From IMG/VR virus record IMGVR_UViG_3300030098_004828, positions 1-64,000 of that record: a stretch of 64,000 nt of DNA. One strand, written 5' to 3'. Of this stretch, positions 2,752 to 55,500 are shown in pieces. The notes under the pieces are model-generated. The model saw only the letters and a program-made list of their open reading frames with translations, made no database searches and had not been told where the DNA came from. Position 1 is the stretch's first letter; each line of letters begins with the position of its first letter. The translations under genes were made by a program, and so were the position numbers.

Positions 2752-3705
2752 TTATCTTCTTTGTTCTTGAGGTGGCGTATCCATCTCTATTATTTGCATT
2801 CTTTCAAACTGAGCTTTAAAGAAACTCATACGTGTATCACCATTTCTTGCTTTAAGGAAATGTAATACTAATGTTTTGTCATCTTCTATTATATATCTAT
2901 CAGGTCCATAATATCTAATCTTTTGTTTAGCAGGCCGGTTAATACCTATTAAAGTATCAGCATGTTGTAACATTGCATCTGAACCAAATATATCTGATTC
3001 TAATACATAATTACCATACTTACCGTTCTGTGCTCTGTCTGGATTATCTATATTTCTATTTAATTGTGATAAACATATAAACATACAAGGATATTTACGT
3101 TTCATCTCTGTAAAGAACTCACCTAATTCAAATAACATATCTAATCTGTTATTTTGATAAGGTGCTCTTTTAACAAGAATACTATGATCCAATGTGATAA
3201 TAGTTTTCTTTTGATGAGTATTCATATAAATATCAACTTGATCTCTCATTTGATTTACAGTCATTGGTGTAGTTATTTGATCTACAGGACTTTTGATTCT
3301 ATCTTTAGCATACATATGACATTTTTCAAATGTTTCTTTAGTGAGTTTCATTCCTGCACTACACAACTCTTTATAAGTTTTACCAGTTACCGAAGAAAAC
3401 TCTCTTAATGCTGTAGTTCTACCTACCATTTCAAAACTAAATTCTAATACTCTATAATCTTCTTCAGGATTAAGAATAAAAGACTCTCTAATTATTTGAT
3501 CTTTAATCAATGTTTTACCAGAACCAGGTCTTCCCCCAATTACAGTAAGAGTATTCCACTCTAATCCATCAGTTACTGCATCATTAAATTTAGGCCATGG
3601 AGTTTGTATAGATTTCTCTTTACCACTCTGCCTAGCAAGCATATATTTTAATGCATCATTAAAAGCTTGATATTGTCCGTCCCATGCTGGTTTAACTTTA
3701 CTCAT
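2752..3705 (-). CDS. dnaB: DnaB-family replicative helicase (ATPase domain only)
   Basis: GGRPGSGKT, FSFEM, ITLDH, LSQLNR, LKARNG motifs. Confidence 0.9.
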   Translation of the reverse strand: MSKVKPAWDGQYQAFNDALKYMLARQSGKEKSIQTPWPKFNDAVTDGLEWNTLTVIGGRPGSGKTLIKDQIIRESFILNPEEDYRVLEFSFEMVGRTTALREFSSVTGKTYKELCSAGMKLTKETFEKCHMYAKDRIKSPVDQITTPMTVNQMRDQVDIYMNTHQKKTIITLDHSILVKRAPYQNNRLDMLFELGEFFTEMKRKYPCMFICLSQLNRNIDNPDRAQNGKYGNYVLESDIFGSDAMLQHADTLIGINRPAKQKIRYYGPDRYIIEDDKTLVLHFLKARNGDTRMSFFKAQFERMQIIEMDTPPQEQRR

Positions 3706-4298
3706 ACTACATTTTCTTTAAAATGATCTTTTTCTAATTCAGTTATACCATCACGAACCATGTCACAATAATCAGCTAATTCTGAATGTTTTACTTTATT
3801 TTTATCTGATTTACATATAAAGTATTGACTAGTTTTCATATACATATATTCTTTTTCTCTATATTCATTAACATACATAACAGTTGCATGCGCAACTTCA
3901 TCCCATGTATAATCATAAGTATCAAAGAACCATCTAAATGCATTTTCTAATGTCTTAACATTTTGTCTACCTGGTTTACCACTTGGTAATTTACCTGCAG
4001 GAAATGCTTCTCTATATATTTTAAGCATTTCTGGATAACCTTTGCCTAATAATTGAGTGCTAGTTCTTTTTTTTGCAATTCTAAATAAATTATCATATTT
4101 AGCACAAATTCTTTTACCTTTTGCACTTAATGTAAACTTTGGTTTTTTATATATCACCAACTCTAAATCAATTAGTTTTTGTGCCAATCCTTTCTTGTTA
4201 TCTAAAGGAAAAGAAATACTATTCTTTATCCCGTACAAGAGAAGTAATTGGTTCGGTGTAAGTTTGTCTTTTAATATCTTCTGGAACAGTTCTAACAT
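3702..4298 (-). CDS. Putative replication initiator/helicase loader-like protein
   Basis: Likely start MLELFQ at 4298; N-terminal wHTH-like part plus helical C-terminal domain; ATGA-coupled to dnaB. Function inferred from context. Confidence 0.45.
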   Translation of the reverse strand: MLELFQKILKDKLTPNQLLLLYGIKNSISFPLDNKKGLAQKLIDLELVIYKKPKFTLSAKGKRICAKYDNLFRIAKKRTSTQLLGKGYPEMLKIYREAFPAGKLPSGKPGRQNVKTLENAFRWFFDTYDYTWDEVAHATVMYVNEYREKEYMYMKTSQYFICKSDKNKVKHSELADYCDMVRDGITELEKDHFKENVV

Positions 4299-12344: not shown

Positions 12345-13112
12345 AACAGTTTACTCTGTTGTTTCTCTATGGCTGAGTGAGTGACCATTTCCGCTAACAT
12401 TATATGACATGTCTGTCATATTACACACACTATGTATTCCTACATAGTAGCAAGCATTACCGCATTTTATCCTGTGCTGGCAGTTGTTCATCCTACAGTC
12501 CATAGAATCAATGATTACATCACGAGTTGTAAACTCTTCAGAGAAGTACCTTCCCCTATCTAAGTACAATAGTAAACTATTATACCACGCCTTGTGCCCA
12601 AGGTAGATAACCATATCATCTCAACTATAGCCTTGCGAGCTATAACTGTTCCCATATTACAGGGAAATAAGGTAATTGTCCTTATAAGATGTCCAATGAC
12701 TTTTACTTTTCTATTAATAATTGATTATGTCACGTAAGTGTGACTAACTATATTAACTAACCTAGATCCAAGCAGTGCATCAGAAATGTAACCATCATCC
12801 CTTTCAGGACAACGCACTACAACTGCTCAGTGTAAATATGTCTATTTACGTTACTTCACGATGCTGTAACCACATCATTTGTAATGAATACAACAGTAAC
12901 TCTATACCTAGAGTGTCCATCATATTCTAATAGTTTACCTGTTGTGCTTTCACACTCAATACCAACGGCTATTGGTATCACAACTCATCCATAAGGACAT
13001 TGTTGTGGTTACTACCTTGCATACATGGATTGCTAATGCAACGCTACTAAGGTGCTAACCTGTTCACTTTATTCCTATTACTAGGCTTATCCTATTGACT
13101 ATATGCAGCCAA
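12345..13112 (-). ncRNA. Large structured noncoding RNA (GOLLD/ROOL size class; family unassigned)
   Basis: At least 15 hairpins in ~750 nt, many with GNNA tetraloops on the minus strand; G-U pairs work only on minus; long-range helices; higher GC than flanks. Confidence 0.7.
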
Positions 13113-13130
13113 AATACTACCGAAGTAGTA
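13111..13130 (-). terminator. cUUCGg hairpin plus U4 (weak terminator or processing signal)
   Basis: TACTAC-TTCG-GTAGTA-TTTT immediately 3' of the tRNA-like RNA. Confidence 0.6.
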
Positions 13131-13135
13131 CATAG

Positions 13136-13213
13136 TGGAGATGCTCAGAATTGAACTGAGATACTACATAGTACCACAAGTGGTCTTCTATGCAGGCAAA
13201 ACCTTTCATCCCC
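13136..13213 (-). ncRNA. tmRNA tRNA-like-domain-only RNA (alanine-acceptor mimic), 78 nt
   Basis: GGGGATG/CATCTCC-A acceptor with G3-U70 and A73; AAAGGTTTTGC D-loop; helix CTGCATAG/CTATGTAG capped by ACCAC-TT-GTGGT; T-arm CTCAG-TTCAATT-CTGAG; no anticodon loop or tag ORF. Confidence 0.8.
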
Positions 13214-13370
13214 ATTTTATTTGCCTCCGTTACTATAATTCTACTATAGAGAGAGAACAAACTAATTAACTCTAATCATTCCAACCATATGGATGTGTAT
13301 GTGTAACAATACTAATGATTATAGCTATATCTTATTTTAATGCTGTTGAGTTCAGCTGATTACTATTAAG

Positions 13371-13398
13371 GTGGTAAAAAGTGGTGTTTTGTGGTAAT
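13371..13398. repeat. Three GTGGT units at exact 10-bp spacing
   Basis: gtggtaaaaa gtggtgtttt gtggtaat at 13371, 13381, 13391. Confidence 0.7.
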
Positions 13399-41362: not shown

Positions 41363-44300
41363 ATGGCAAAGAAACAACAGCAACAAAATACACCTCTTCA
41401 AAATACCTCAAATGTAGATACAGATCTATTTAATAAAGGTATGCATAAAGATCCTAACCCTAGCTTTCAAGGGAGAGATGGGTTCTATTCACATGCTAGA
41501 AATGCTATTAATAATTCAAAAGAAGGTGATGTAAATGTTCTTGGTAATGAACCTGCTAATTATCTATGTGCAGAGATACCATATACTATAATAGGATTTA
41601 TTCATTTAACAGGAGATAATTGGATAGTTTTTTCAACAGACAATAGTAATAGTGTTATAGGTAGATTTGATGATAGCAAATGTCATTATGAACAAATAGT
41701 AAATGATCCGTGTTTAAGCTTTAATACATCACACTTAGTTACAGGGGCTTCTAAAGAGATGTTTGATTGTTCTTGGCAAGTATATTGGGATGATGGACTT
41801 AATCCCTCTAGAACACTTAATCTAGATGATATTCCATATGTACAAATACAAACAACAGGACCACTTATTGATGGTACTCCTTGTGTTACTTATATAGATG
41901 CACAACCTTTACAATTAGATTGTGAAAGATTGCGTCTACATCCTTTAATGCAAACACCTTGTGTTACATTAACTAAATCAGATACAGGAGGTTTATTAGG
42001 AAATGGTACTTATCAAGCTTTTGTTTGTTATACAATGAATGGAGAAAAAATTGGAGATTACTTAGGTGTTTCCAATGTTCAATCTTTATGGGATCATGCA
42101 GATACTACAGGAGCTTTAGATATTACCATTACAAATTTAGATACACAATTTGACTTTTTTAAATTAGTTATAATGTCTAATATAAAAGGTAATATAGTAG
42201 CTAAAGAAATAGGAGAATATAGTACACAACAATCATTTATTTCAATAAGTGTTATATCTCATGAATTAATATCAATTCCAACTTCTGATATAATAAGAAG
42301 AAGTATTACTTTTGAAAGATCTGATAATATGTATGTGGTTAATGATTATTTAATTAGATCAGGACCTACTACAAATTTTGATTTTAATTATCAACCATTA
42401 GCAAATCAAATTCAAACACATTGGGTATCTACAGCATATCCTGCAGACTATTATAATAATGGTGGTAATAAAACATCATTTATGAGAGATGAACAATATG
42501 CATTTTTTATAAGGTTTATTTATAATACAGGTGAAAAATCTCATTCATATCATATACCAGGTAGACCAAATGGAGGATATGCAATTAATCCAATTAATGA
42601 TAATACATTAACAGGTTTTGATGCTATTAATGATATTAATACTGATAACGTTGCTTGGAGAATTAGAAATACAGCTGTAGATGCAAGTGGTACATTAGGT
42701 GGTATTGGAGTAATACTTCCTGATGGAGGTAGAGTTATAGGTAAAGGTTATATGGGATATTGGGAATCTACAGAATTATATCCTTCTACAGATCCTGCAG
42801 GTAGATGGAATTCTAATACTGGTGATCCTAATTATAATTTATGTGGTACTCCAATTAGGCATCATAAAATGCCAGATGAACAAACAAGTGCTGTTTGTCA
42901 TCTTAATGGTCAATCAGGTACTAATTTAGAAATACATCTATTAGGAGTTGAATTTGTAAATATTCAAGCTCCTGTAGATAATGATGGAAATTTTATACAA
43001 AATATTGTAGGTTATGAAATTCTTGTAGGATCTAGACAAGGTAATAAATCTATTATTGCTAAAGGTCTTATGAGAAATATGAGAAGATATACACTTCCTC
43101 AAGCAGATGATTCAAGAAGTGCAGCAGGATCAGTTGTAACAGCGGGTAGTGCATTTGCTGAAGGAGCTCCAATTATACATAGTGGTGTAAATTCAGGTCT
43201 TATGCCAAATTATCCATTTAATGATTGTGATAGAAATGATCCTTTTTTAAGAGATACGCAAGGTAGTGGTAATTTATATCAAGGAGGATTAATGACCCCT
43301 AGTATTTTTAGTGCGGACTGGTCTGGTGGAGATACGTATCCTTTAGGTTTTACATTTCATTCTCCAGACACAATGTTTAAAAAGATTTATTTAAATCCTA
43401 GTGAGGTTTATAGTTATGGTATGCGTCAAGGACAATCAATAGGTAAATTTAAAAAATCTGAAAGACATCCAGGACATAAATTATTACGTGATATCTCTGC
43501 TTTTGTAGCAGCACTTATTGGTACAGGTTATGCCATAGAACAATCACGTGGTAAGAAAACTAAAAAAGTTACAGGAGCTAAAGCAATGTCTATAGGTAAA
43601 TCTGGGGGACCATGGTCAGATAATACTTCAGGAGGAACCTTTACTACAAATGCTTATACTATAACAGGAGGTGGATATACAATATCAGTTGCACCACCTG
43701 CACTTGTGCCAACTGGACCAATTACAGTGGGAGCTGGAGGTGGAGTAACTACAAATGATAATACAACAGATAGTGAAGTACCAACTGCTAATGTTAATCC
43801 AGTTACTGGACAACCTTATTCTACAGGAGATGCTCCATCTCAAGATGGTACTGTAGTTGGTAATGCATCTGCTGGACAAGGAATTGCAGAACAAAATTTA
43901 GTAGCTTATGAAAACAGCGCTGGAGTTCCACTTAACTCAGGAACTCCATGGGTTGCAGGATCTGATACAGGTACACCTCCAGCACCAACAGATCCACTAT
44001 TTGCAGATCTTGTTAGCACTACAATTCCAACAACTGGTCCAGGTATGCAGAATACTGTAGATAATTCTGAAAATTCATATGCTTTAAATCATGGATTACA
44101 ATCTATTAGTACTACTTCTATTAGTACTCCTAATCAACAAGAACTTAGATATTTTAGATCTGTAAGACAAATGCATGTTGATGCATTAAGAGATACATCA
44201 AGTTATATTGGTCCAGGAGAAGAAATAACACATGAAGGTAGTAGATATAAATCTTTACCAGGATTAGGTCAGATATTATTAAAAATGTATCAGACAATGA

Positions 44301-47300
44301 ATATGATAGCTCTGGGTGGACAAGAAATAATTGATCTTATTTACAATCTTGCTAGCTATCAAGATTATGCATGGAAATATAATGCTCATGGATTTTATAA
44401 TAACGTGCTTTCTCCATATAATAATAATAGTCAAGTTCATAGACAGAATGTACAAAAAGCTAGATACCTATCAAATACTATACAAAATATTACAAGTGGT
44501 ATAAGAGTTAATAATTTACACAGACCAAAGACTGTAGCAGTACTTACTAATCCTATAACACTTCCTGTAGAAGCAACTGTTTTTTCTATACCAACTTCTA
44601 ATCAAGATAATTCAAGAGTTAACTTAGGAGCATTAACTGGAAATCCAACAGCTTATTTTGTTAGAGATATATGTGCTCATTATGTAGGATTAAAAGTTGA
44701 TTTTAGAAATCAATATGGACAATTAGATGGTATAAAACAAATTCCAGCAGAAAATTGTACGCAATTATTTTTAGATAATAACCCTATGGGAACAACCCCT
44801 GATGTAAATAGTGTATTTACAAGTGATATTATTTTTGGTGGAGAAATGTATATAAACAGATATACAGAAAAAGTTATAATGCCTTTCTTCTATGATTACT
44901 TAGCAGAAGATCAACCAGATGGAACACCATTTGATTATAGACTTAGACAAAATATTCCTTCACCAGAATATTGGGCTTTCTTTGCAAATTATGATCTTTC
45001 TGGTTTGGTATCTCCTGTAACAGATCTTACATTTAACTGGACTGGAGTTGGTGGTACAGTTCCCGGTTTACCATCTCAATTTCATAATTTAGATTTTCCT
45101 GGTGATGATATGAGTACTTTTGGTGGTATTCTAAGTGCTCTTGTTGGAAATGGTAGAGGATTATTTGTTTTAAAAGAAGGTGCTGTATATTTACATAATA
45201 GTGGTATAAATGACTTTTTTGTTGAATCAGAAATAAATGTAGCACAAAGAGATTGGAAAGAAAATAGAGGGGAAAGACATTATGATTGGTTAGAATACAC
45301 TGATTTTGATGAGCTGTTTCATGTTGATTCAATTAAAGATGGAAACTTTTATATGTATGATGAGTCTTTAACAAAAGCTAAATTAAGCACACAATTAGTA
45401 TCATGGGGAACAATACAAGATTTAATTTATGATCCTCTTATTGCAGAAACATGTTATGACTATTATCCTAAAAGATTAATCTATTCTTTACAAGCACAAA
45501 AAGAAAGTAAAGAAGATTTTTGGAGAATATTTTTACCATTTAACTATAAGGATTTTAAAAATCCTGCAGTAGTTATGAAACCTATATCTAAAAATGGAGC
45601 AATGGTATTTTATCCAAATCTTTCTCCTACAGTATTTCAAGGTGTTGATCAGCTAACAACAGATATGGAAAGTAAAATAACTATAGGTGATGGTGGTTTA
45701 TTTAGTCAACCATTTCAAAATGTAGTTAATTCAGATTTACCACATGAATATGGATCATGTGAAAGTGCACGTAGTGTTATTAACACACCTAGTGGTTTAT
45801 TTTATATATCACAAGAACAGGGTAAAATATTTCATTATGCAGGTCAATTAATTAATATAGCTGATGCAGGTTTAAAACATTGGTTTAATGAATATCTACC
45901 TTCTAGATTACTTAATGCTTTTCCTGAAATAGAAAATTATCCAGAATTTTATGATAATCCAGTTACAGGTATAGGATGTCAATCAGTATATGATCCAAAA
46001 TATGATCTTGTATATTTCTGTAAAAAAGATTATGAACCTGTTCCTGATCCTGATTCATGTATTCAATTTGATACAGAATCTGGTGGTTTTATTATAAATG
46101 AAACAGAATGTTATGGTACAGATCAAGACATTCTTTGTCCTATTGGATATACACTTGAAGATGGTGTATGTGTTTTAACTACTGAGTGCGCTCCTGATAG
46201 TTGGGACAGAACAATGCCTGGAGAATTTATAGAAACAGTAACAAGATGGGTTCCTGCTGATAGATGTGAAATGGATGTAGTATTTGTTATAGATGCATCC
46301 TCTTCTGTAATAAATAATTGTAACACAGACAGAGCTAAACTAATGTTAGATTCTTTTTTAAATGGAATGCAAGCTGGAATGGATGCAGGAGATATTCAAG
46401 TTGGAATGATCACTTTTAATTTTGCAGCAAATACATTACCGCAAATAGGAAATATGGATACTACAAATTGTCCTGATTGTTTAAGTGATGTACTAAGTTG
46501 GAATTGGGCTACTGCTCCTGTTCAGCAACCTGATTGTTATGGTGCCGAAACTATGTCAGATTATGCAGATGCAAAAGTACAATGCTGTTTTACTTGGCCA
46601 CTGCAACAAACAACTTCAGTTGATAATGTTCAATCATTTATAGATAATTATTATTGCTCAATGGGTGAGGGTGATATATGGAATGATCCTGCACCATGTA
46701 ATATATGTGCTAATTTAAAATGTACAAATGTAATAGATGCAACATGGCATGGAATGGAAATGTTATATGATCCAAATTTTGCAAGACAAGGAGTTCCAAA
46801 AAAGTTAATTGTAATAAAGGATGGATTTCATAATATTAGTCCATTTTATCCTTTGAATACATTTATGACTGCTGAAGGTTGGCCAAATTCTGCATATGGT
46901 AATCTTTCAGGTGGCTATAATGAACCTTTATGGACTAATCATATAAACAATACAGGTAGTTCAGCTAGTCCTGCTACACCTGATTATACTTGGGATAATG
47001 GAACTGGAGGTAATGTCAATTATCCTGATTATTTAATTGAACCTGGTACATATGCAGTTAGTACAACTCCTTTTGCAGCGACAGACCAATGGACTGCTTG
47101 GTTGAATACAAACATAATACAAAATGCACAATATTTAGATCCTACCGTAGGTGTGCTAGAAATGATTAATCTCATGTTATATAATGGCGTTTATAATGCA
47201 ACGGCAGATCAGTATAATGCTAATACAAATACAAATCCAGGATTAGCATTGGGTAACTATTATTCTGATTTTACAAGTTCTACTGCAATAAATGACATGG

Positions 47301-49549
47301 TTGAGAATGTTCTACAAAATCTTTGTATGGAAGCTGTAACAGAAGACATATATGGTGATCCATATACTATAACTGAATATGCTTGTCCAGAAGGTTCAGT
47401 ACAAATAGGAGAAACTCAGGAAGGAATTCCTATTTGTGAATGTACACTTACAGCTGATCCTGAATATGTTGATATTATTACACCAATATCTTTAACAAAT
47501 GAAGAATACTTTACTGATATATCATGGACAGCAAGTTATGATCCAAAAGGTAAAGCATGGATATCATTCCACGATTGGCATCCAGAATTAACAGTATCTA
47601 GTTTAAATCATTTTTTAACAACTAAAACAGGAACAACTGAAGAAGTATTTTGTCCCCCTGGAACTGTACTTAATGAATATGGAGAGTGTGAATATTTAGC
47701 ATGTCCTACAGGATATATTAGTTTAGATGATAGTTCTTCTTTAACATGTTGTGCAGAATTTGTTGAACCTCCAGACGTAGAAACTATAGAAGGAAGTAGG
47801 GATGAAATTACCGCATTGGGTGTTATAAATCCCACCTTCTTAATGAGTATGGAAGATTGGAATAATATTGCCACTGATAATCCTTCGTATCCTGGAACGC
47901 CTAATTGTTATGGTTCAGGTGCCCAATTACAAGCTACTGGAAATCCTGGAATGCATATACATACTCCATTACCATGGACAAGATGTCCATTTGTTACTGA
48001 CCCTTCTGATATGAATGGTACAGGTCTTTCTATAGGGGATCTTACAGTTGATCCAACAACCAATCAGCCTGCTCTTTCACCTGATACACTTCCTACAAAC
48101 CTGTACAATTTTCCAGGGGTTCCTTGTAATCCATCAGACCCCTTTGGATTTGGGTGGATGAATGGTGTTACTTTTCCAGGTTCAAGTGGACCTACTATGA
48201 TGGGTTTTGTTCACGGTATTCAATCTGATATGAATTGGCAAGAAGGTATTTCACAACAAATGAGTGGATCTATGATGCCAAATATGCCTTATCAAGGAAC
48301 TATTGATCTTAGGAATGTTCCACCTGGTCAAGGTATGGATAGTACAGCTCGGTTATTAATTTTTGGTGGATTTAGTCAATGTTGTTATGATGAGTTATTA
48401 TGGGCATCTCCATTTATTAGTGATCAAAGTTGGACTACTTATACTATAAACTTTACTCCGCTTGCTGCATATGATCATATTCATTTTAAAGTAGAGAGTC
48501 AATATTTTAATGCACAAACTGGAGGAGTTAATTATTTACCATGGCAAGGTAATCCTAATTTTGAAATGGTTACAAGTAATCATATGAATGTTGGATTTGC
48601 CGATCCAGGGGATTTTATGAGCCAAGCTTATTTATTAGTAGATAATTTTACAGGAGTTGATCTAACTGTAGAAATCCCTGATGTAACAACATGTAATTGT
48701 CCAGATATAAATGGTATGCCATCTACAATGGTTTTAAATGATGGTTTATTTCAAACTCCTGCTGATCCTCAACAATGTATAGATGCTTGGGAAGAGGATG
48801 GAACTTACGCAGTAATGTGTGTAGTAACAGATTGTGTAGATCCAATTACAATTACTACAGAACCTTCTAATCAAGTAGGTGGAATATGGAGACATAATGA
48901 TCGTTGTGATTTATTTGCTAATTATTATGCAAAACAATATCCTTGGGAAGTTGAACTTGTAGAATCTGTAGGTCAAACAATTGATGTATTAAGAAGTGTT
49001 GAATATCAATTAGAATCCTATGTATATATACAAAATACAGATCTTGATACAGGAGAAATATTAAATCTTAGTTGTGAAGATAGATGGCATGATTTGGAAT
49101 ATAATTTTAATGAGGCTATTATTTATAATACAGAACAAATTTCAGGATTATTAAAAATGGAATTAACTCCAGCTGAAATGAATAATGTTCCATTAATTAC
49201 AGAATATCCAATAGTTAATGCTGCTGATATAGAAATATTATATAGTAAAGTAGAACAGAAATATAGATTTAATCAATTCTGGGATATAACTGCAGATAGA
49301 ACAGCTATAGTATCACAGTTTATTACACAATTAAATGGTTATATTAAAGAACTTAATGAAGATAATTTAAATTATAATAAACCACAATTACAACGTAAAA
49401 GGTTTAGACATTATTGGAATAGAGTTATATTAAGAAGACAACCTGTTGTTAGTTATTATGATGATGAAGGGGAACCAGTATATGTTCCAGAGGATAGAAA
49501 AATGTTACTTAAAATAGTTAATACTAAATTAAATCAATCAGTTAGATAA
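41363..49549 (+). CDS. Tail stabilisation/muzzle protein with vWA and jelly-roll insertions
   Basis: KGMHKD..P, FMRDEQYAF, PIRHHKMP, WISFHDWHP motifs typical of crAss-like tail stabilisation proteins; MIDAS DASSS at 46292. Confidence 0.75.
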   Translation: MAKKQQQQNTPLQNTSNVDTDLFNKGMHKDPNPSFQGRDGFYSHARNAINNSKEGDVNVLGNEPANYLCAEIPYTIIGFIHLTGDNWIVFSTDNSNSVIGRFDDSKCHYEQIVNDPCLSFNTSHLVTGASKEMFDCSWQVYWDDGLNPSRTLNLDDIPYVQIQTTGPLIDGTPCVTYIDAQPLQLDCERLRLHPLMQTPCVTLTKSDTGGLLGNGTYQAFVCYTMNGEKIGDYLGVSNVQSLWDHADTTGALDITITNLDTQFDFFKLVIMSNIKGNIVAKEIGEYSTQQSFISISVISHELISIPTSDIIRRSITFERSDNMYVVNDYLIRSGPTTNFDFNYQPLANQIQTHWVSTAYPADYYNNGGNKTSFMRDEQYAFFIRFIYNTGEKSHSYHIPGRPNGGYAINPINDNTLTGFDAINDINTDNVAWRIRNTAVDASGTLGGIGVILPDGGRVIGKGYMGYWESTELYPSTDPAGRWNSNTGDPNYNLCGTPIRHHKMPDEQTSAVCHLNGQSGTNLEIHLLGVEFVNIQAPVDNDGNFIQNIVGYEILVGSRQGNKSIIAKGLMRNMRRYTLPQADDSRSAAGSVVTAGSAFAEGAPIIHSGVNSGLMPNYPFNDCDRNDPFLRDTQGSGNLYQGGLMTPSIFSADWSGGDTYPLGFTFHSPDTMFKKIYLNPSEVYSYGMRQGQSIGKFKKSERHPGHKLLRDISAFVAALIGTGYAIEQSRGKKTKKVTGAKAMSIGKSGGPWSDNTSGGTFTTNAYTITGGGYTISVAPPALVPTGPITVGAGGGVTTNDNTTDSEVPTANVNPVTGQPYSTGDAPSQDGTVVGNASAGQGIAEQNLVAYENSAGVPLNSGTPWVAGSDTGTPPAPTDPLFADLVSTTIPTTGPGMQNTVDNSENSYALNHGLQSISTTSISTPNQQELRYFRSVRQMHVDALRDTSSYIGPGEEITHEGSRYKSLPGLGQILLKMYQTMNMIALGGQEIIDLIYNLASYQDYAWKYNAHGFYNNVLSPYNNNSQVHRQNVQKARYLSNTIQNITSGIRVNNLHRPKTVAVLTNPITLPVEATVFSIPTSNQDNSRVNLGALTGNPTAYFVRDICAHYVGLKVDFRNQYGQLDGIKQIPAENCTQLFLDNNPMGTTPDVNSVFTSDIIFGGEMYINRYTEKVIMPFFYDYLAEDQPDGTPFDYRLRQNIPSPEYWAFFANYDLSGLVSPVTDLTFNWTGVGGTVPGLPSQFHNLDFPGDDMSTFGGILSALVGNGRGLFVLKEGAVYLHNSGINDFFVESEINVAQRDWKENRGERHYDWLEYTDFDELFHVDSIKDGNFYMYDESLTKAKLSTQLVSWGTIQDLIYDPLIAETCYDYYPKRLIYSLQAQKESKEDFWRIFLPFNYKDFKNPAVVMKPISKNGAMVFYPNLSPTVFQGVDQLTTDMESKITIGDGGLFSQPFQNVVNSDLPHEYGSCESARSVINTPSGLFYISQEQGKIFHYAGQLINIADAGLKHWFNEYLPSRLLNAFPEIENYPEFYDNPVTGIGCQSVYDPKYDLVYFCKKDYEPVPDPDSCIQFDTESGGFIINETECYGTDQDILCPIGYTLEDGVCVLTTECAPDSWDRTMPGEFIETVTRWVPADRCEMDVVFVIDASSSVINNCNTDRAKLMLDSFLNGMQAGMDAGDIQVGMITFNFAANTLPQIGNMDTTNCPDCLSDVLSWNWATAPVQQPDCYGAETMSDYADAKVQCCFTWPLQQTTSVDNVQSFIDNYYCSMGEGDIWNDPAPCNICANLKCTNVIDATWHGMEMLYDPNFARQGVPKKLIVIKDGFHNISPFYPLNTFMTAEGWPNSAYGNLSGGYNEPLWTNHINNTGSSASPATPDYTWDNGTGGNVNYPDYLIEPGTYAVSTTPFAATDQWTAWLNTNIIQNAQYLDPTVGVLEMINLMLYNGVYNATADQYNANTNTNPGLALGNYYSDFTSSTAINDMVENVLQNLCMEAVTEDIYGDPYTITEYACPEGSVQIGETQEGIPICECTLTADPEYVDIITPISLTNEEYFTDISWTASYDPKGKAWISFHDWHPELTVSSLNHFLTTKTGTTEEVFCPPGTVLNEYGECEYLACPTGYISLDDSSSLTCCAEFVEPPDVETIEGSRDEITALGVINPTFLMSMEDWNNIATDNPSYPGTPNCYGSGAQLQATGNPGMHIHTPLPWTRCPFVTDPSDMNGTGLSIGDLTVDPTTNQPALSPDTLPTNLYNFPGVPCNPSDPFGFGWMNGVTFPGSSGPTMMGFVHGIQSDMNWQEGISQQMSGSMMPNMPYQGTIDLRNVPPGQGMDSTARLLIFGGFSQCCYDELLWASPFISDQSWTTYTINFTPLAAYDHIHFKVESQYFNAQTGGVNYLPWQGNPNFEMVTSNHMNVGFADPGDFMSQAYLLVDNFTGVDLTVEIPDVTTCNCPDINGMPSTMVLNDGLFQTPADPQQCIDAWEEDGTYAVMCVVTDCVDPITITTEPSNQVGGIWRHNDRCDLFANYYAKQYPWEVELVESVGQTIDVLRSVEYQLESYVYIQNTDLDTGEILNLSCEDRWHDLEYNFNEAIIYNTEQISGLLKMELTPAEMNNVPLITEYPIVNAADIEILYSKVEQKYRFNQFWDITADRTAIVSQFITQLNGYIKELNEDNLNYNKPQLQRKRFRHYWNRVILRRQPVVSYYDDEGEPVYVPEDRKMLLKIVNTKLNQSVR

Positions 49550-52500
49550 TGAAGTATAGTAAAGACGGATATAAAAGAAATAGTAAGGATAAAAATAATC
49601 CTTATAATATAATACCCTCTGGTAATATTACTATGGAGGGTGTTGACTTTCCTGTATATGGTGTTGATAATTTAGGTAATAGTCAAGTTATGATGCCAGG
49701 TGCTAACTATACATTTCCAGGCAATGAAGTATTTGAAGTCCCTTTAGTACAATTGCAAAAAGGTGGTGAACCCCCATATAAAACTACAGACAATGAAGGT
49801 AATGATTGGGTAATTATTGGAGATCATAAAATATCTGCTGATCATGTAGAGTTATTAGAGGATGGCACTTTGTCTTGGCATGATGTATCAGTATTAAATC
49901 AACTTATAAAAACAGATCCAAATTATAGTATAGATAATAATGGAAATTTTAAATATAAAGGTGAACAAGGAGAAATGTCATTTAAAACACATTTCAGTAG
50001 AAAGTCTAATCCTTTTGTACAATTTTGGGAAAGAAGAAATGTAGATCTTCCAAGAACTTTTATGGATGTAGAAGGTAAGACTATGGAAGAAAAATTTGAA
50101 AATATAGCTCAATTATATGTTGATATGTTTCATCAAATGAAAACAAAAGAATGGGAAGTAGGAGAAGAAGAAGGAGTAAATTGGGATCAAGGAACTGTAA
50201 GTAGTAAAAATGATTTATCTAACTTGACAGATCGTGGTTATCATTTTATGGATGATGAAATAGTAAGTACAGGAGTTGTAGGAAAATTTGATGATTTTTT
50301 TAGAGGTAATTTTAATATCTCAGTAACAGGAGGATTAAAACAAAATGATTTAAAAGAGGCAGTTAAAAAGTTTTTAAGAGATGAATATTTTAAACAAGAC
50401 AAAGAAGAAAGAACAAATTTAGAGTATGAAATACAATATCCATATATAAATGATTTAACAATTACTAAATTAACTGATGTAGAAAAAAGTGGAGAAGCTA
50501 TTAAAGAACATTTTGAAAATGTAAAAGGTAATAAATATCTTGAGCATGAATTAGAAGATTATATAGATGAAGTAAAAAGAACACAAGTTATAACAGGATT
50601 TAAAGCAGTTCATTGGGGACCTGGAAATTCAGAATTAAAATGGGATTCAGGATGGGTTGGTCCTATTGGTACAAATAATACAGATGAAGAAAGCAATAAA
50701 AAAGAAGTTCTTGAATGGTTTGATAATTTAGAACCTAATGAAAAAGAAAACATTGTTGGAGCAATGCCTAATATTAATTTTAATGAAGATTATGATAAAG
50801 ATGATTTCTATAGAGAACTGATATATACACTTCAATTTAATGATCCAGCTGTTTCATCTAGTAGGAATTCTTGGAGAGATAAATTTCCGGCACATCTTTT
50901 ACCACCAGGTTTATCAAATTTACATGATTGGAGTGAAGTAGTAAATGCCAATGAGAATATAGATTGGTTACCAGGTAGTGATATGAGTCATGGATCTAAA
51001 AATCCATATGATGTAAATAGAGGTTATTTGACTGATGATTTTAAACAGACTTTACGTACTGATGAAATGGCAGATACAATTTTTCCGGGACATGGAATTA
51101 GTAATCACTATATGGAGGATACTAGTACTCCAGGATTTGATAATACAATTAAAGGTCATACTATAAATTGGGGAGAAATTGAAAGAGGAAATACAGGTGG
51201 TTGGGGAAGTGTAAGATTAGGTACAAACATATGGCCAAAAAAAGAAGAAAATCCTGAAGTTTGGGGACAGACCCATGATTACTTTAAACAAAACTATCCT
51301 TTTAGATATACACAATTTAAACTTAAATACGGAGATCCTTTAAAAGGAGATAGTAGTGAATGGGAAAAAGCAGTTGAAGATTTTTTAATTGATAAAGAAG
51401 GAGGATATAATAGCCCATGGTTTAATAGAGTTGATGAAGTAACTACAGGAGGACACTATAGTCAAGAAGGGTCTAAAGGAGTTTGTGCAGAAGGATATAT
51501 ACAACAATGGGATGCTTACGGAAATAGATGGATTTGTGTTGAACAAAAAGTTTTTAAAAATGAATCATCTGGATTTGCACAAGATAAACCTATAACATTA
51601 GAAACTAAAAATATAGATTTACTACCTACTTTTATACCAGAATTACCAGCATTTACTAAACAAAATGTTAATGTTTCAGAAACAAATGAAGAAACTAATT
51701 ATCCTAAATATTTAAAATTTAATGATAATTGGGAAAAACAATTAAAACGGTTAGGTATTTGGGATGAAAGAATACAAAAGAAAGTTAATAGACTTAATAC
51801 ACATCCTAGTGCAAGATTTAAAAATGTAGATCATAGTGATTTAAAAACTGAATCAAGTAGTAATGTTTTTGGTATTAAAGATTGGAATACTGGACGTTTA
51901 TTACAAGATGGAGATATAAGTTCTGGTAGTCTTTATTGGACTGAAGGTTTAGGTGATAGATGGTATGAAAGATATTTAAGAAAATTAAATAAAGAAGAAA
52001 ATAGAAAAAATAAATGGAGAAGACAGTCTTCAGGTGTTACAACTTATAAAGATGATTTTAAAGGTTGGGATACATTCACTATGGATTTATATAATAAAGG
52101 AAATCAAACATTTTTTCATCCAGGAGAATTAACAGAAGAAGATTATATCAAATACCTTCAAAGTCATGGAGTAAATGATTTGATAATTAATAAAATATTA
52201 AATCATACAGAAACTTTTAGTGATTCTGAAATTCAAAAAATAATAGATCAAGATCCCGTTATTATGGAAAAATTAAATACATCTGGTGAGCCTGGAGATA
52301 GAGAGGTACCAAAAACTTTACAAGATTATAGAGATAGATTTGGAGTTGAAAATTATAAATATGGAGGCTTTTTACGTAAAGGACAAGATGGGACTAATAC
52401 TGATGATGATGTTGTATTAGATACTGTAGATTTAACTGGTGACAAGGTAGAACAAACATATTATCCTGATTATGACTTTTATGATATATCAGGAGAAAAA

Positions 52501-55500
52501 CAAAAGTTAATAGAAAAATTACAAACGGATGCTTTTAAAGATAGGTATTATAAACATTATGAAAATCTTACTGGCAAACAAATGACTGATGAAGAATACA
52601 ATCAAAGACTTGCAGATCAAATAGCTTTTATACAAGGAGGTTCAGATCAAGCAACACCTATAATGTATACTAGAAATGAAGAAGGTAATATAGATGTTTT
52701 TGAAGAAGGGAAAGGTGGAAAAACTATATATGGACATATGAGTCCTACTTTTTTAAAAGACTATTTTAATACAAGTAGAGGTCATGTACAATATTTATTT
52801 GAAAGAGATGAAAATAATAATATAATAGAAGATGAAAATGGTAATCCAATTATAACTGGTTGGGAAATGTCATTACCAGGAGCAAAAGAATATGAGGCTA
52901 TGGAATGGATGACTGGTCCAGATGGATATTCACAATTTTCTGGTCCTGATGGTGTACATCCTCTTGCTCATTCAACTATGCAACATGAAATTTCTCATTT
53001 ATATAATGCTCCAAATTCACCCTTATGGAGAGGAATAGATGAATATAATGATAGTAATCCTCTTACTGGTGAAATATTTGGTGATCATCAACCATGGTAT
53101 GCTGATGATCATACAAGAGCTATAGAAGAAATTGGTGCAGGTAGAACTATGTTTGAACAAGCTTTAAAAGATTATGGAATATGGGATTCTAATAAAGGAG
53201 AATTTAAAGATAGACATTTAAAAAAATTAGAAAGAGCTATAGCAAAAAATGATGACTTTATAAGAGATCCTCGTGTTGGTAATTATCTTTTTATAAATGC
53301 TAATACAGATCAAGGTATTACAACCCAAAGAACAGAAGTAAATGAATATTTAGAATCATTAGGTTTAGCAAATCCAACTGATTGGTATTTATCTGATTAT
53401 GGAACTGGAATTACTAATCAAATAAGTCCAAGACTAATGCAGTCTGATTTAACTAATAGTTTAAATATAATTAATAGATATGAATCAAAGTATCCTAGTA
53501 TACCTTCAAGAGAAGAAAAAAGAAAAAGGGATTATGATGGAAGTTGGTGGAGAAATGTAAAAAGAATGGAAAAAGAAGATCATAAAATGATGAAAAATTT
53601 TATGTCTGATAAGTTTGATATAACAGAAATACAAGATCCTAATTATGATATTATATATGATTTAAAAGGATCATTTATTGATGAGTATATGCAAAGGGGT
53701 AATATAGAAAAATTAGGAGTTTATGAAGGAAAAGTAGATGGATTAGCAGAATATTTTACAACTGGTGATACATTTGATTATAATCATCCAGGCTTTAAAG
53801 AAATGCCAGATGAGTTTAGAAAAAAATATGAAGTAAAATTTAATGAATTATTATCAGAAGATAATAGAAATAATTTAATTGATATACTTAATAGAACTTC
53901 AAAAGGGTGGAATTATCAACAAGGTAATTTATGGGATGACGAAAAAGAAGTAAGGATACCCTATACTGCACAACAACTTACAGACGAAGATATAATTTTT
54001 TATAAAGATTTTGAAAAGCAATATCAACAATTGTCTAATCAAATTCAACAAGAAATATATGAATATCATAAACATAAAATAGATCAAGGAGGTAAAAATG
54101 TTAAAAAGTATCTTAACGAATGGGCAATGGATAATGACGTTGATGAAACAGTTACAGCAAAAGATGGAAAAGAAATTAATAATTTAAGTCAAAGAATTGC
54201 TAATAATTTAAAATATAATGAACAAAATGATTTTGATTATTTTGGTATTATTAATACTGACAATAAATTAGCTAAAGCAGATGCTGGAAAAGAAATATCA
54301 AATATAATTACAGGTCTTGCAGAGTTTAAAAATGGAGGTGATATAGGAAAAAGTTTTTTAAATTTTGGTAATAAGTTTGGAGAAGAGAATGTACATATCT
54401 TAATGAATCATTTAAAACATAATAATAAAACTAAAAATTTAAAAAAATTACAAGATGGTGGTGATTATATGAAGTTTATTACAGATATGATGAACAACCC
54501 AAATGCTTTCAAAGAAAGATTAAAAAATATAACACCAATTGGATATGATGTTAAACACGCTTTTAATGAAGTAGTTGCCAACAAAAAACTTCCTACATAT
54601 TGGGATGGTAAGCCTCAAACTTGGGAAACATGGGGTGAAAATTTAACATTTATAAATGAGGATGGCGAAGAAGTTTCTGCATATACAAAAGAAAATTTAG
54701 AACTAATAAAGAATACTTCTACAGATGCTTGGCATCTTTATTTAGGATACAAACCAGAAAATAAAACAATGTCTAAATCAGTTTTTAAACCTACTGTAGA
54801 TGTTGATAATCCAAATGCAACATATTATTCTTTTAATAATCCTTTAGATATATGGGGTGACATCAAACATTCTGGTATATTAGACTATGGTGAAGAAGAT
54901 TTTAAAAATTTTTGGGAAGAATCTAATAAAAATAAAAGAGTACCTAAAGGTTATTATAATACTGCAAAATTTGAAAATAAAAGTAAAGGAGAAAAAGAAG
55001 AATTAAATCAGTATATTCAAGTATTAGATTCTTCTGCAGGAGGTTTTGCACTTAAAGATTATCAACTATCTAAAGGTTATGATGAAGAAATTGGATTACC
55101 TTATATAGCTTATTATGATATTTTTGATTTTGATATACCTTTAGCAGGAAGATCAATTAAAGGGAGCAAAGTAGCAGGCAATCCTTATGAAATTTATGGA
55201 AGATTATATTATGATGCAAACTATACTGATGAAGATGGAGATCCTTTTTTAATACCACAAGAATTTATAGGAAGCTATAATATAGACTTTAATGATTTTG
55301 AAAAAGGAATTAGATGGGCTGAAAGTAAAAACGGTATTCTTATGGAAAATCCAAATTCATCTGCAACAGGATTATATCAACAGTTATATGATCAAATTAA
55401 AGAAGAGTATGGAGGCACTAGAGAACAATTTAAAAATGATCTTGCAGCACAAGAGTTTTTCTTTAAGAGAAGGCAAGATGGTGACTTAAGAAAATGTTGT

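What the first reader, a model, noticed from the sequence alone, without database searches (positions are those of the whole stretch)
13136..13213. Phage mini-tmRNA: tRNA-like domain without an mRNA-like domain
Seen (minus): GGGGATG AAAGGTTTTGC CTGCATAG AAG ACCAC TT GTGGT A CTATGTAG TAT CTCAG TTCAATT CTGAG CATCTCC A. It has the AlaRS identity elements G3-U70 and A73, an 11-nt D-loop-like segment with GG, an 8-bp helix, a 3-nt linker and a canonical T-arm. Established: that is the layout of the tmRNA tRNA-like domain, and tmRNAs lacking a tag ORF are known from jakobid/oomycete mitochondria. Here the pseudoknot/tag region is replaced by a small hairpin, there is no 7-nt anticodon loop, and two usual tmRNA junction sequences are altered (GA to GC, GAC to TAT). 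Inference: an alanylated decoy that binds SmpB/EF-Tu, rescues ribosomes without degradation tagging, absorbs tRNA-targeting defence toxins, or serves as an RNase P/Z processing handle for the adjacent large RNA.
Basis: partly seen in the sequence, partly recalled or inferred. Interest (0 to 1): 0.9.

Follow-up and report, generated by a model that had tools for sequence, protein, structure and literature searches.

The report
Phage tag-less mini-tmRNA beside GOLLD RNA
A marine crAss-like phage carries a 78-base RNA gene that is only the alanine-accepting, tRNA-like end of the bacterial ribosome-rescue RNA (tmRNA); it belongs to a large, mostly unannotated phage family with one noted precedent, and probably interferes with or hijacks the host's ribosome rescue.

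Summary

It is a real, conserved RNA gene. A covariance model built only from other phage elements matches it end to end (72 bits, E 3e-13). The family shows strong covariation in all four helices. With sampling that leaves the acceptor stem free, G3-U70 occurs in 90 of 91 members and A73 in 91 of 91.

It is not a tRNA, an ORF, a recent deletion remnant, or part of the neighbouring RNA. That neighbour, 3' on the same strand, is a GOLLD-like RNA.

The kind is already known. Mycobacteriophage DS6A's "TLD-only" tmRNA (Mao 2009; Hudson 2014) matches the same model, and the literature reports that this form inhibits tmRNA in E. coli.

New here:
- The scale: at least 150 distinct elements in viral contigs, nearly all missed by ARAGORN.
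- The frequent position in head-gene modules.
- This variant in a crAss-like phage, apparently co-transcribed with GOLLD.

Function is inferred: Ala-charged, SmpB-binding competitor of host tmRNA.

The parts
13136..13213 (-). TLD-only mini-tmRNA gene (78 nt), G1 at 13213, discriminator A73 at 13136
   Evidence: Sequence, fold, independent model R2 at 72.1 bits, copies in related contigs.
13207..13213 (-). Acceptor stem 5' strand GGGGAUG. It pairs with 13137-13143 and includes G3 (13211) opposite U70 (13139).
   Evidence: In the family, G3-U70 occurs in 90 of 91 members when the acceptor is not fixed by the search pattern.
13196..13206 (-). 11-nt D-loop analogue AAAGGUUUUGC with the GG dinucleotide; no D stem
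   Evidence: GG is present in this segment in 90 of 91 independently sampled members. The only variable position among close copies (U, A or G at nt 14) lies here.
13164..13195 (-). Helix-2-like arm replacing the pseudoknots and tag region. It has an 8-bp stem (13188-13195 with 13164-13171), an AAG/A internal loop and a 4-bp hairpin with a CUUG loop (13173-13184).
   Evidence: All 8 stem pairs and the hairpin pairs covary across the family. The G-U to A-U change in L007 and L208 keeps pairing.
13161..13163 (-). 3-nt linker UAU, where canonical tmRNA has GAC
   Evidence: Model alignment. The 3' junction varies in the family (GGAC 21, AGAC 9, AAAC 6, GAAC 6, GUAC 4, ACAC 4, GUAU 3) with the A kept in all seven.
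13144..13160 (-). T arm: CUCAG / UUCAAUU / CUGAG
   Evidence: Close homologues with the same acceptor stem and T loop have T stems UGGAG/CUCCA, GUGGG/CCCAC, GAGAG/CUCUC and GAGGG/CCCUC, all fully paired.
13137..13143 (-). Acceptor stem 3' strand CAUCUCC, followed by A73 (13136) and then CUA. CCA is not encoded but C74 is present.
   Evidence: In the family, N74 is C in nearly all members and CCA is encoded in 27 of 91.
13227..13260 (-). Conserved upstream motif (UUGUUCUCUCUCUAUAG ... UAGUAACSG), the left border of a variable cassette and a possible phage promoter or transcript start
   Evidence: Found at the same relative place in L007, L011, L025, L033, L208, L211 and L212. The function is inferred.
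12370..12828 (-). GOLLD-like RNA: conserved 3' domain plus the hairpin before the linker
   Evidence: Rfam RF02032, 65 bits, E 4.4e-16, model 1-416 of 416, below the gathering score of 150.
12829..13135 (-). Probable variable 5' domain of the GOLLD-like RNA. It starts 4 nt after A73 with a UUCG-capped hairpin (13131-13114).
   Evidence: The 791-nt stretch 13135-12345 folds with z -5.05. The hairpin is kept in L208 and L211 with a U-A to U-G change and without the U tract. Assignment to the GOLLD 5' domain is an inference from the published GOLLD layout (10.1101/2024.12.08.627333; PMC12990946).
12345..12360 (-). Conserved hairpin motif AACAGAGUAAACUGUU, the right border of the cassette and a possible terminator or processing site
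   Evidence: Exact 15-mer found at the cassette end in L007, L011, L025, L033, L211 and L212.

Best explanation
Window 13213..13136 (minus strand) is a functional phage gene for a tag-less mini-tmRNA. It consists of the tRNA-like domain of tmRNA closed by a short helix and hairpin.

Shown:
- It belongs to a large, structurally conserved, virus-enriched RNA family that includes the TLD-only tmRNA of mycobacteriophage DS6A.
- The family keeps the alanine identity set (G1-C72, G2-C71, G3-U70, A73), the T loop and the D-loop GG.

Inferred mechanism:
1. The RNA is transcribed from the conserved upstream motif together with the GOLLD-like RNA.
2. It is cut out by RNase P at the 5' end and by 3' processing after A73 or C74.
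3. It is completed with CCA by the host enzyme and charged with alanine by host AlaRS.
4. It binds host SmpB and EF-Tu.
5. Because it has no resume codon or tag frame, it competes with host tmRNA for SmpB and for stalled ribosomes, so trans-translation tagging is blocked or short-circuited during infection.
For: Identity:
- Independent model R2 scores the element 72.1 bits, E 2.6e-13, full length. Genuine tRNA-Ala genes score only about 34 bits.
- Rfam tmRNA matches the L007 copy at 40.4 bits, E 4e-14, and 15 of 20 family members above the cut-off.
- DS6A's element (JN698994 28478-28557) matches R2 at 57 bits.

Structure under selection:
- 92.5% of cells are paired, against 44-57% when partners are slid. 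There are 516 double changes against about 110, and all four helices are supported.

Charging under selection:
- With a search pattern that leaves the acceptor free, G3-U70 occurs in 90 of 91 members and A73 in 91 of 91, while pairs 4 to 6 vary freely.

Independent module:
- The same element (97% or more identical) sits before two unrelated large RNAs.
- A homologue with the same acceptor stem and T loop but covarying stems sits after a capsid gene in a non-crAss phage.

Virus enrichment:
- 90 of 93 pattern matches in viral contigs are such elements, against 4 of 117 in cellular genomes.

Mechanism, from the literature:
[quoted passage not shown] 2009).
Against: - No expression, processing, charging or SmpB-binding data exist for this element.
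- CCA is not encoded.
- The two junction sequences that are canonical in tmRNA (GAC and GGAC) are altered here, so SmpB binding could be weakened. The window lineage falls below Rfam's tmRNA cut-off.
- If titrating SmpB were enough, the reported inhibition by a non-chargeable molecule would not predict such strict retention of G3-U70 and A73. That retention fits a role that needs charging, such as ribosome entry or productive rescue.
- No SmpB, peptidyl-tRNA hydrolase or CCA-adding enzyme gene was found in the window, and none appeared among the neighbour protein clusters that were annotated.
Confidence: 0.55

Rival explanations
1. Productive tag-free ribosome rescue. The Ala-charged mini-tmRNA with SmpB enters stalled ribosomes and accepts the nascent chain. 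The chain is then released without a degradation tag by a host stop-independent release factor or by drop-off and peptidyl-tRNA hydrolase. This frees ribosomes for phage translation and spares truncated phage proteins.
For: - Near-universal retention of the alanine identity elements and of C74 argues that charging matters.
- Many members lie inside head-gene modules on the same strand, next to prohead protease, portal, TerL and capsid genes.
- Tag-less tmRNAs persist with an imported SmpB in jakobid and oomycete mitochondria and some plastids (PMC11915505, PMC4131195).
Against: - No release factor or hydrolase partner was found next to the elements among the annotated neighbour clusters.
- Published tests report inhibition of tmRNA, not complementation (PMC4131195, PMC11915505).
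- Without a resume codon the ribosome is left with an empty A site again.
Confidence: 0.2
2. A processing handle. The tRNA-like fold only recruits RNase P and RNase Z to define the 5' end of the GOLLD-like RNA here, or to cut polycistronic late mRNAs elsewhere. The released small RNA has no role of its own.
For: - It lies 4 nt upstream of the GOLLD-like RNA on the same strand, inside one conserved cassette.
- GOLLD RNAs are often next to or contain tRNAs, and env-38 GOLLD lies downstream of a Met-tRNA (10.1101/2024.12.08.627333; PMC12990946).
- 23 of 183 family loci have a tRNA within 100 nt.
Against: - RNase P and Z do not need G3-U70, A73 or a tmRNA-type D loop, yet these are almost invariant.
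- Any tRNA would serve as a handle.
- The element occurs without any large RNA after it, and no GOLLD or ROOL was found in 20 family loci.
Confidence: 0.1
3. A decoy for host defence enzymes that attack the acceptor end of tRNAs or tmRNA, or a sponge for RNase R or other tmRNA-associated factors.
For: - It is an accessory gene with a patchy distribution, sitting in a hypervariable cassette.
- tmRNA and tRNA fragments take part in a phage anti-CRISPR complex (PMC11662646).
Against: - There is no anticodon loop, so it cannot absorb anticodon nucleases.
- No defence or anti-defence gene is consistently adjacent among the annotated neighbour clusters.
- The specific tmRNA-type features are not explained by this reading.
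Confidence: 0.08
4. Not a functional RNA: a decaying tRNA-Ala or tmRNA remnant, an attachment-site fragment, or a short protein-coding ORF (SD GGAGG at 13228-13224, ATG at 13215).
For: - An ORF of about 34 codons with a good Shine-Dalgarno sequence overlaps the element in the window.
- Phages that integrate into ssrA carry ssrA fragments (PMC9004378).
Against: - In L087 the same frame hits TAA at codon 6. L007 and L208 lack the SD and ATG.
- All three substitutions among close copies would be non-synonymous but are neutral or pair-improving in the RNA.
- Both acceptor strands are present, so it is not a 3' fragment.
- The element is 97% or more identical where the flanks share no detectable similarity.
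- No relative has a full-length tmRNA at the site.
Confidence: 0.03

Closest known systems
TLD-only tmRNA of Mycobacterium phage DS6A (tmRNA Website tmID 11587; Mao et al. 2009, RNA Biol 6:355; Hudson, Lau and Williams 2014, PMC4131195; PMC11915505)
   Same: - Phage-encoded.
- About 80 nt.
- Acceptor stem with G3-U70 and A73, D-loop analogue with GG, one helix with a purine-rich internal loop and a small CC...GG hairpin, and a T arm.
- No tag frame or pseudoknots.
- Both match model R2 end to end (DS6A 57 bits, window 72 bits).
- Both are unannotated in their records.
   Different: - DS6A infects an actinobacterium and has 70% G+C. It keeps the 5' junction UCGAC, while its 3' junction reads GCAC rather than GGAC.
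- The window element is in a 30% G+C marine crAss-like phage, has UGCC and GUAU junctions, does not encode CCA, and is followed at once by a GOLLD-like RNA.
Bacterial tmRNA (ssrA, Rfam RF00023)
   Same: - The tRNA-like domain layout and its alanine identity elements.
- The 3' end (GUUCAAUUC...CAUCUCCA) aligns to the tmRNA consensus.
- The L007 copy matches RF00023 over 1-374.
   Different: - About 300 nt are missing: no resume codon, tag reading frame, stop codon or pseudoknots PK1-PK4.
- It scores below the Rfam cut-off and is not called by ARAGORN.
Tag-less organellar tmRNAs (jakobid and oomycete mitochondria; about 65-bp forms in Mallomonadaceae plastids; PMC11915505, PMC4131195)
   Same: Natural tmRNA reduced to the tRNA-like domain and retained together with SmpB.
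   Different: - The organellar forms are vertically inherited in reduced genomes and presumably serve the organelle's own rescue.
- The phage form is an accessory gene acting on a host that has its own full tmRNA.
tRNA genes next to or inside GOLLD RNAs (10.1101/2024.12.08.627333; PMC12990946, citing Morgado et al. 2020)
   Same: A tRNA-shaped gene directly 5' of a GOLLD-type RNA in a phage, on the same strand.
   Different: - The reported neighbours are ordinary tRNAs (Met, Phe).
- Here the neighbour is a mini-tmRNA, and the same mini-tmRNA precedes a different, unclassified large RNA in sister phages.

Membership tests
tmRNA (RF00023) | tRNA-like domain: 7-bp acceptor stem, G3-U70, A73, T arm with T loop, and a D loop with GG but no D stem | tested here: met
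   Read directly from the sequence and the fold. Also aligned to the tmRNA 3' consensus.
tmRNA (RF00023) | mRNA-like domain with a resume codon, tag reading frame and stop codon | tested here: not met
   Only 16 nt lie between the two strands of the 8-bp helix (13172-13187), and they form an internal loop plus a small hairpin.
tmRNA (RF00023) | Pseudoknots PK1-PK4 and the long helix 2 | tested here: not met
   Absent. The Rfam alignment of the L007 copy spans model positions 1-374 in an 81-nt sequence, so the middle of the model is deleted.
tmRNA (RF00023) | Score at or above Rfam's gathering cut-off (47 bits) | tested here: not met
   - Window: no hit at gathering thresholds.
- Window: no hit in 2-kb and 0.5-kb E-value scans.
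- Window: a truncated 17.2-bit hit in a 151-nt scan.
- L007 copy: 40.4 bits.
- 15 of 20 other family members pass with 47-72 bits.
tmRNA (RF00023) | Canonical junctions 5' ...UCGAC and 3' GGAC flanking helix 2a | tested here: not met
   The window has UGCC and GUAU. Only 23 of 74 family members sampled without fixing the junctions have both canonical forms.
tmRNA (RF00023) | Alanylation by AlaRS and binding of SmpB and EF-Tu | not testable with these tools
   Inferred only from the identity elements. It needs biochemistry.
Phage TLD-only mini-tmRNA (DS6A type) | Full-length match to a covariance model of the family that was built without the candidate | tested here: met
   R2 was built from 26 IMG/VR elements. 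The window scores 72.1 bits, E 2.6e-13, positions 1-79. DS6A scores 57 bits and Streptomyces phage Peebs 61 bits.
Phage TLD-only mini-tmRNA (DS6A type) | All helices supported by covariation | tested here: met
   (alignment fitted to the model, with some columns fixed by the search pattern). Among close homologues there are five different, fully paired T stems.
Phage TLD-only mini-tmRNA (DS6A type) | Encoded by a virus | tested here: met
   - The window carries crAss-type capsid and tail-ring proteins, a portal and TerL.
- The source contig is in IMG/VR.
- The window-specific pattern has no match in 185,579 cellular genomes.
tRNA-Ala | Cloverleaf with a D stem and a 7-nt anticodon loop carrying an Ala anticodon | tested here: not met
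   ARAGORN finds no tRNA. There is no D stem and no 7-nt loop. Real tRNA-Ala genes score about 34 bits on R2, against 72 for the element.
GOLLD RNA (RF02032), for the neighbouring RNA | Conserved 3' domain matching the Rfam model at or above the gathering score (150 bits) | tested here: inconclusive
   65 bits, E 4.4e-16, full model span and many conserved motifs aligned, but below the cut-off. No homologues were available to test covariation.

The most novel reading that the evidence does not exclude
The mini-tmRNA and the GOLLD-like RNA work as one unit. They are made as one transcript and may stay linked or associated. A GOLLD cage (10 to 14 chains in solved structures) could then carry a ring of alanine-accepting tmRNA heads that trap SmpB, AlaRS or stalled ribosomes. 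More broadly, TLD-only tmRNAs would be a widespread phage system for switching off host trans-translation, largely missed by ARAGORN and left unannotated in the phage records examined here.
Probability: 0.12. Interest if true: 0.85.

Novelty: new member of a known kind. Interest (0 to 1): 0.55.

Why it matters
Trans-translation is the main ribosome-rescue and quality-control path in bacteria. A phage-made RNA that competes with tmRNA would be a compact way to take it over.

- **Scale.** The kind was noted once, in phage DS6A. This work shows it is common: more than 150 distinct elements in two capped scans of viral contigs.
- **Selection.** The family is under strong selection for alanine identity.
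- **Position.** It is often placed in head-gene modules or tRNA arrays.
- **Annotation.** ARAGORN calls only 8 of 183 loci. The members examined in GenBank phage records (DS6A, Peebs and other Streptomyces phages) are unannotated. Phage tmRNA-type genes are therefore probably undercounted.
- **GOLLD.** In this crAss-like phage the element sits directly before a GOLLD-like RNA, whose function is unknown. That gives a concrete, testable link between GOLLD and the translation apparatus.
- **Tractable systems.** Cultured members in Streptomyces phages allow laboratory tests.

Tried and rejected
- **Standard tools.** ARAGORN and Rfam at gathering thresholds found nothing in the window.
- **GenBank phages.** BLAST of the locus, of 20 kb around it, and of the element alone found no match.
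- **Neighbouring genes as a route to relatives.** The neighbouring small proteins gave only the source contig and one uninformative fragment, L002.
- **Exact 18-mer.** It gave one chance match in an unrelated GC-rich contig, L004.
- **Narrow model R1.** Built from two near-identical copies, it found nothing new.
- **Rfam tmRNA on the window copy.** It gives no full hit in 2-kb and 0.5-kb scans, probably lost at the filters.
- **Kumao.** The hit is a full-length annotated tmRNA, not a mini form.
- **Conserved partner protein.** None was found. The four neighbour clusters present in most loci are head-module genes. Several smaller clusters were not annotated.
- **Coding reading.** Rejected on a stop codon in L087 and loss of the SD and ATG in relatives.
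- **Part of GOLLD.** Rejected because the element occurs without GOLLD.
- **Attachment-site remnant.** Rejected because both acceptor strands are present and the position is wrong.
- **Cellular genomes.** 113 of the 117 pattern matches lack an acceptor stem and were not studied further.

Full report
**1. What is there**

RNAfold gives exactly the proposed structure:
- a 7-bp acceptor stem;
- 11 unpaired bases containing GG;
- an 8-bp helix with an AAG/A internal loop and a 4-bp hairpin;
- a 3-nt linker;
- a 5-bp T stem with the loop UUCAAUU;
- discriminator A.

The energy is -26 kcal/mol with z -2.6. The same fold appears when 501 nt are folded together. G3 pairs with U70. After A73 comes CUA, so CCA is not encoded.

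ARAGORN finds no tRNA or tmRNA in the window, and Rfam at gathering thresholds finds nothing.

As a chance control I used a simple structural filter: a T arm with a TTCRA loop abutting a 7-bp acceptor stem. I ran it on both strands of the window plus about 1 Mb of fetched loci, mostly related phages. It returned four hits: this element, its copy in L007, a real tRNA-Arg, and one match in an unrelated contig.

**2. The surroundings**

The window comes from IMG/VR contig 3300030098_004828. It is a low-G+C crAss-like phage: Pfam finds the crAss capsid and tail-ring proteins 1 and 2, and PHROGs finds the portal and TerL.

The element lies in a 1.3-kb gene-free, more G+C-rich stretch between leftward replication genes and rightward structural genes.

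Downstream on the same strand, 12828..12370 matches Rfam GOLLD over the whole model (65 bits, E 4.4e-16, below the gathering score of 150). The 307 nt in between are most simply the variable GOLLD 5' domain. The 791 nt after the element fold with z -5.05.

Published work says GOLLD RNAs are phage-borne, often sit near tRNAs, and can carry tRNAs in their linker. The env-38 GOLLD lies downstream of a Met-tRNA (10.1101/2024.12.08.627333; PMC12990946).

**3. Relatives of the element**

TerL brought in 80 related contigs. BLAST showed that L007 (TerL 85% identical) carries the element at 97% identity, while the flanks share no detectable similarity.

Rfam's tmRNA model matches the L007 copy over model positions 1-374 with the middle deleted (40.4 bits, E 4e-14, cut-off 47).

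A pattern that fixes the acceptor stem, the first five bases of the D-loop analogue (AAAGG) and the T loop found one more viral contig (L087) and eight metagenome contigs, mostly marine and including a TARA scaffold identical to the window. Among these:
- The T stems are CUCAG/CUGAG, UGGAG/CUCCA, GUGGG/CCCAC, GAGAG/CUCUC and GAGGG/CCCUC.
- The long helix is different in each lineage but always paired.
- L087 is a different kind of phage. The element there follows a P22-type coat gene and a terminator-like hairpin and precedes a glycosyltransferase gene, with no large RNA.
- In L007 and L212 the element is followed by an unrelated structured RNA with no Rfam match, 716 nt in L007 (z -3.8) and about 545 nt in L212.

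So the element is a module of its own, not a piece of GOLLD.

**4. The coding reading fails**

In the window an SD (GGAGG, 13228-13224) and an ATG (13215) open a frame of about 34 codons across the element.
- In L087 that frame reaches TAA at codon 6.
- L007 and L208 lack the SD and ATG.
- The three substitutions seen among close copies would all change the amino acid. In the RNA they fall in the unpaired D-loop analogue or turn a G-U into an A-U pair.

**5. A large family**

About 70 distinct sequences had perfect acceptor and T stems and lengths of 62-91 nt. Many had textbook tmRNA junctions (UUCGAC ... GGAC) and nothing but a hairpin in between.

I built model R2 from 26 of them, none from the window's lineage.
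- The window element scores 72.1 bits, E 2.6e-13, aligned end to end, in the upper part of the family's range.
- Genuine tRNA-Ala genes caught by the pattern score about 34 bits.

On the 87-sequence model alignment:
- 92.5% of cells are paired, against 44-57% when partners are slid.
- There are 516 double changes, against about 110.
- All four helices carry double changes.

Two caveats apply. The alignment is fitted to the model, and positions 1-4 and 69-73 were fixed by the pattern.

**6. Alanine identity without that bias**

A second pattern fixed only the internal junctions and the T arm, leaving the acceptor free. It gave 93 distinct elements, and 91 with at least 6 acceptor pairs were scored.

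| Feature | Result (unless stated) |
|---|---|
| Perfect 7-bp acceptor stem | 90 of 93 |
| G1-C72 | 91 of 91 |
| G2-C71 | 90 of 91 |
| G3-U70 | 90 of 91 |
| A73 | 91 of 91 |
| Pairs 4 to 6 | vary freely |
| Base after A73 | C in nearly all |
| CCA encoded | 27 of 91 |
| GG in the D-loop analogue | 90 of 91 |

The same pattern in 185,579 cellular genomes gave 117 matches, of which only 4 are such elements. The window-specific pattern gave none. The family is therefore virus-enriched and under selection for the AlaRS identity set.

Only 23 of 74 members sampled without fixing the junctions have both canonical forms, and the A of the 3' junction is kept in all seven variants listed.

**7. Link to what is known**

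The tmRNA Website papers list "Mycobacterium phage DS6A (TLD only)". They state that the DS6A sequence is little more than the TLD, and that a similar molecule, chargeable or not, strongly inhibits tmRNA, perhaps by titrating SmpB (PMC4131195, citing Mao et al. 2009). PMC11915505 says the form was shown to inhibit endogenous tmRNA in E. coli.
- I fetched DS6A. R2 finds one hit, JN698994 28478-28557, at 57 bits, with the same architecture including the small hairpin. It is unannotated in the record.
- Rfam's tmRNA model passes its own cut-off on 15 of 20 family members. The five that fail are the window-like variants.
- ARAGORN calls only 8 of 183 loci.
- Cultured examples exist. Streptomyces phage Peebs has one inside its tRNA array, between tRNA-Val and tRNA-Leu, at 61 bits and unannotated. 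BLAST matches at 77-81% identity in other Streptomyces phages are likewise unannotated; these were not scored with R2.
- I found no paper in the held library describing the family beyond DS6A.

**8. Context across the family**

Of 183 loci, 23 have a tRNA within 100 nt. Among 154 distinct elements the most frequent neighbours are prohead protease (20 loci), portal (18, directly downstream, same strand), TerL (12) and major capsid (11). No SmpB, peptidyl-tRNA hydrolase, release-factor-like or CCA-adding gene appeared among the annotated clusters or in the window. No GOLLD or ROOL was found in 20 family loci.

**9. The local cassette**

In the marine crAss-like relatives, a conserved start motif (window 13260-13227) and a conserved hairpin motif (12360-12345) bracket a variable cargo.

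| Locus | Cargo between the motifs |
|---|---|
| L025 | about 150 nt of short filler |
| L011 | a degenerate 119-nt tRNA-like element (R2 24.6 bits, E 0.02) |
| L033 | 290 nt of unknown sequence, with a tRNA-Arg beyond the end motif |
| window, L215 | mini-tmRNA plus GOLLD-like RNA |
| L007 | a 59-codon ORF, the mini-tmRNA, and the other large RNA |
| L212 | the mini-tmRNA plus the other large RNA |

The element is thus an accessory gene with a patchy distribution, and no relative has a full tmRNA at the site.

**10. How it most likely works**

Shown: it is a conserved TLD-only tmRNA homologue with the alanine identity set intact.

Inferred: it is transcribed with the GOLLD-like RNA, excised by RNase P and 3' processing, given CCA, charged by AlaRS, and bound by SmpB and EF-Tu. 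It then competes with host tmRNA. The published inhibition result makes the competitor model the best supported.

The strict retention of G3-U70 and A73 suggests the charged form matters. Either it must be charged to enter stalled ribosomes, or it performs tag-free rescue, which is the main rival. A pure processing-handle role does not explain the identity elements. A decoy role is possible but unsupported.

**11. Verdict**

- The kind is known, so this is a new member with variant junctions.
- Three things appear undescribed in the library searched: the family's size, its near-invisibility to ARAGORN and record annotation, and the pairing with a GOLLD-like RNA.
- Interest is moderate to good (0.55).

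Noticed in passing
window 12370-12828 (minus), probably extending to 13135: A GOLLD-like large RNA lies directly 3' of the mini-tmRNA. Rfam RF02032 scores 65 bits, E 4e-16, over the full model span but under the cut-off of 150. The whole 791-nt stretch folds with z -5.05. This is a GOLLD-type RNA in a marine crAss-like phage.
   Followed up: partly
L007 60-775 (minus); L212 about 3680-4224 (minus): In sister phages the same mini-tmRNA is followed by a different structured RNA (716 nt in L007, z -3.8; about 545 nt in L212). It has no Rfam match at E up to 1 and no similarity to the window's GOLLD-like RNA. It may be an undescribed large phage RNA.
   Followed up: partly
window 13227-13260 and 12345-12360 (minus); L007, L011, L025, L033, L208, L211, L212: Two conserved motifs (UUGUUCUCUCUCUAUAG...UAGUAACSG and the hairpin AACAGAGUAAACUGUU) bracket a hypervariable non-coding cassette in marine crAss-like phages. 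The cargo ranges from about 150 nt of filler to mini-tmRNA plus GOLLD.
   Followed up: partly
L011 571-689 (minus): A degenerate 119-nt tRNA-like element sits at the syntenic site (R2 24.6 bits, E 0.02). It has a good T arm, but the acceptor register is shifted so that the G-U pair sits at 2:71 or 3:70 depending on the 5' end. It may be a decaying or diverged relative.
   Followed up: partly
L033 1228-1302 (minus): A relative carries an ordinary tRNA-Arg(UCU) just beyond the cassette end motif. It is the only tRNA that ARAGORN found in the first 85 fetched loci (L001-L085, about 1 Mb), which are mostly related phages.
   Followed up: no
window 13370-13396 (minus); L011, L028, L035, L049: An ACCAC-rich motif (UACCACAAAACACCACUUUUUACCACC) about 160 nt upstream of the element is conserved in several relatives. 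It may be a regulatory or promoter element.
   Followed up: no
window 41363-49549 and 49549-59538 (plus): Two adjacent giant ORFs of 2728 and 3329 aa lie downstream of the structural genes. They were not scanned against any family library.
   Followed up: no
NC_042011.1 86378-86454 (L446 1496-1572); JN698994 28478-28557 (L323): Cultured phages carry unannotated mini-tmRNAs. Streptomyces phage Peebs has one inside its tRNA array, and DS6A has one between gp33 and the DNA polymerase III gene. BLAST matches in other Streptomyces phages, not scored with R2, are also unannotated. DS6A also encodes an RtcB-like RNA ligase.
   Followed up: partly
family loci L088-L322: Many mini-tmRNAs sit on the coding strand inside the head module (TerL, portal, prohead protease, capsid). 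The base after A73 is almost always C even where CCA is not encoded.
   Followed up: partly
L092 5029-5100: A RAGATH-24 RNA (49.9 bits, above its cut-off of 45.3) lies 2.4 kb from a mini-tmRNA in one viral contig.
   Followed up: no
source contig IMGVR_UViG_3300030098_004828: The contig is 245.6 kb, whereas related crAss-like contigs are about 91-123 kb. It may be a concatemer or a mis-join rather than a true jumbo genome.
   Followed up: no
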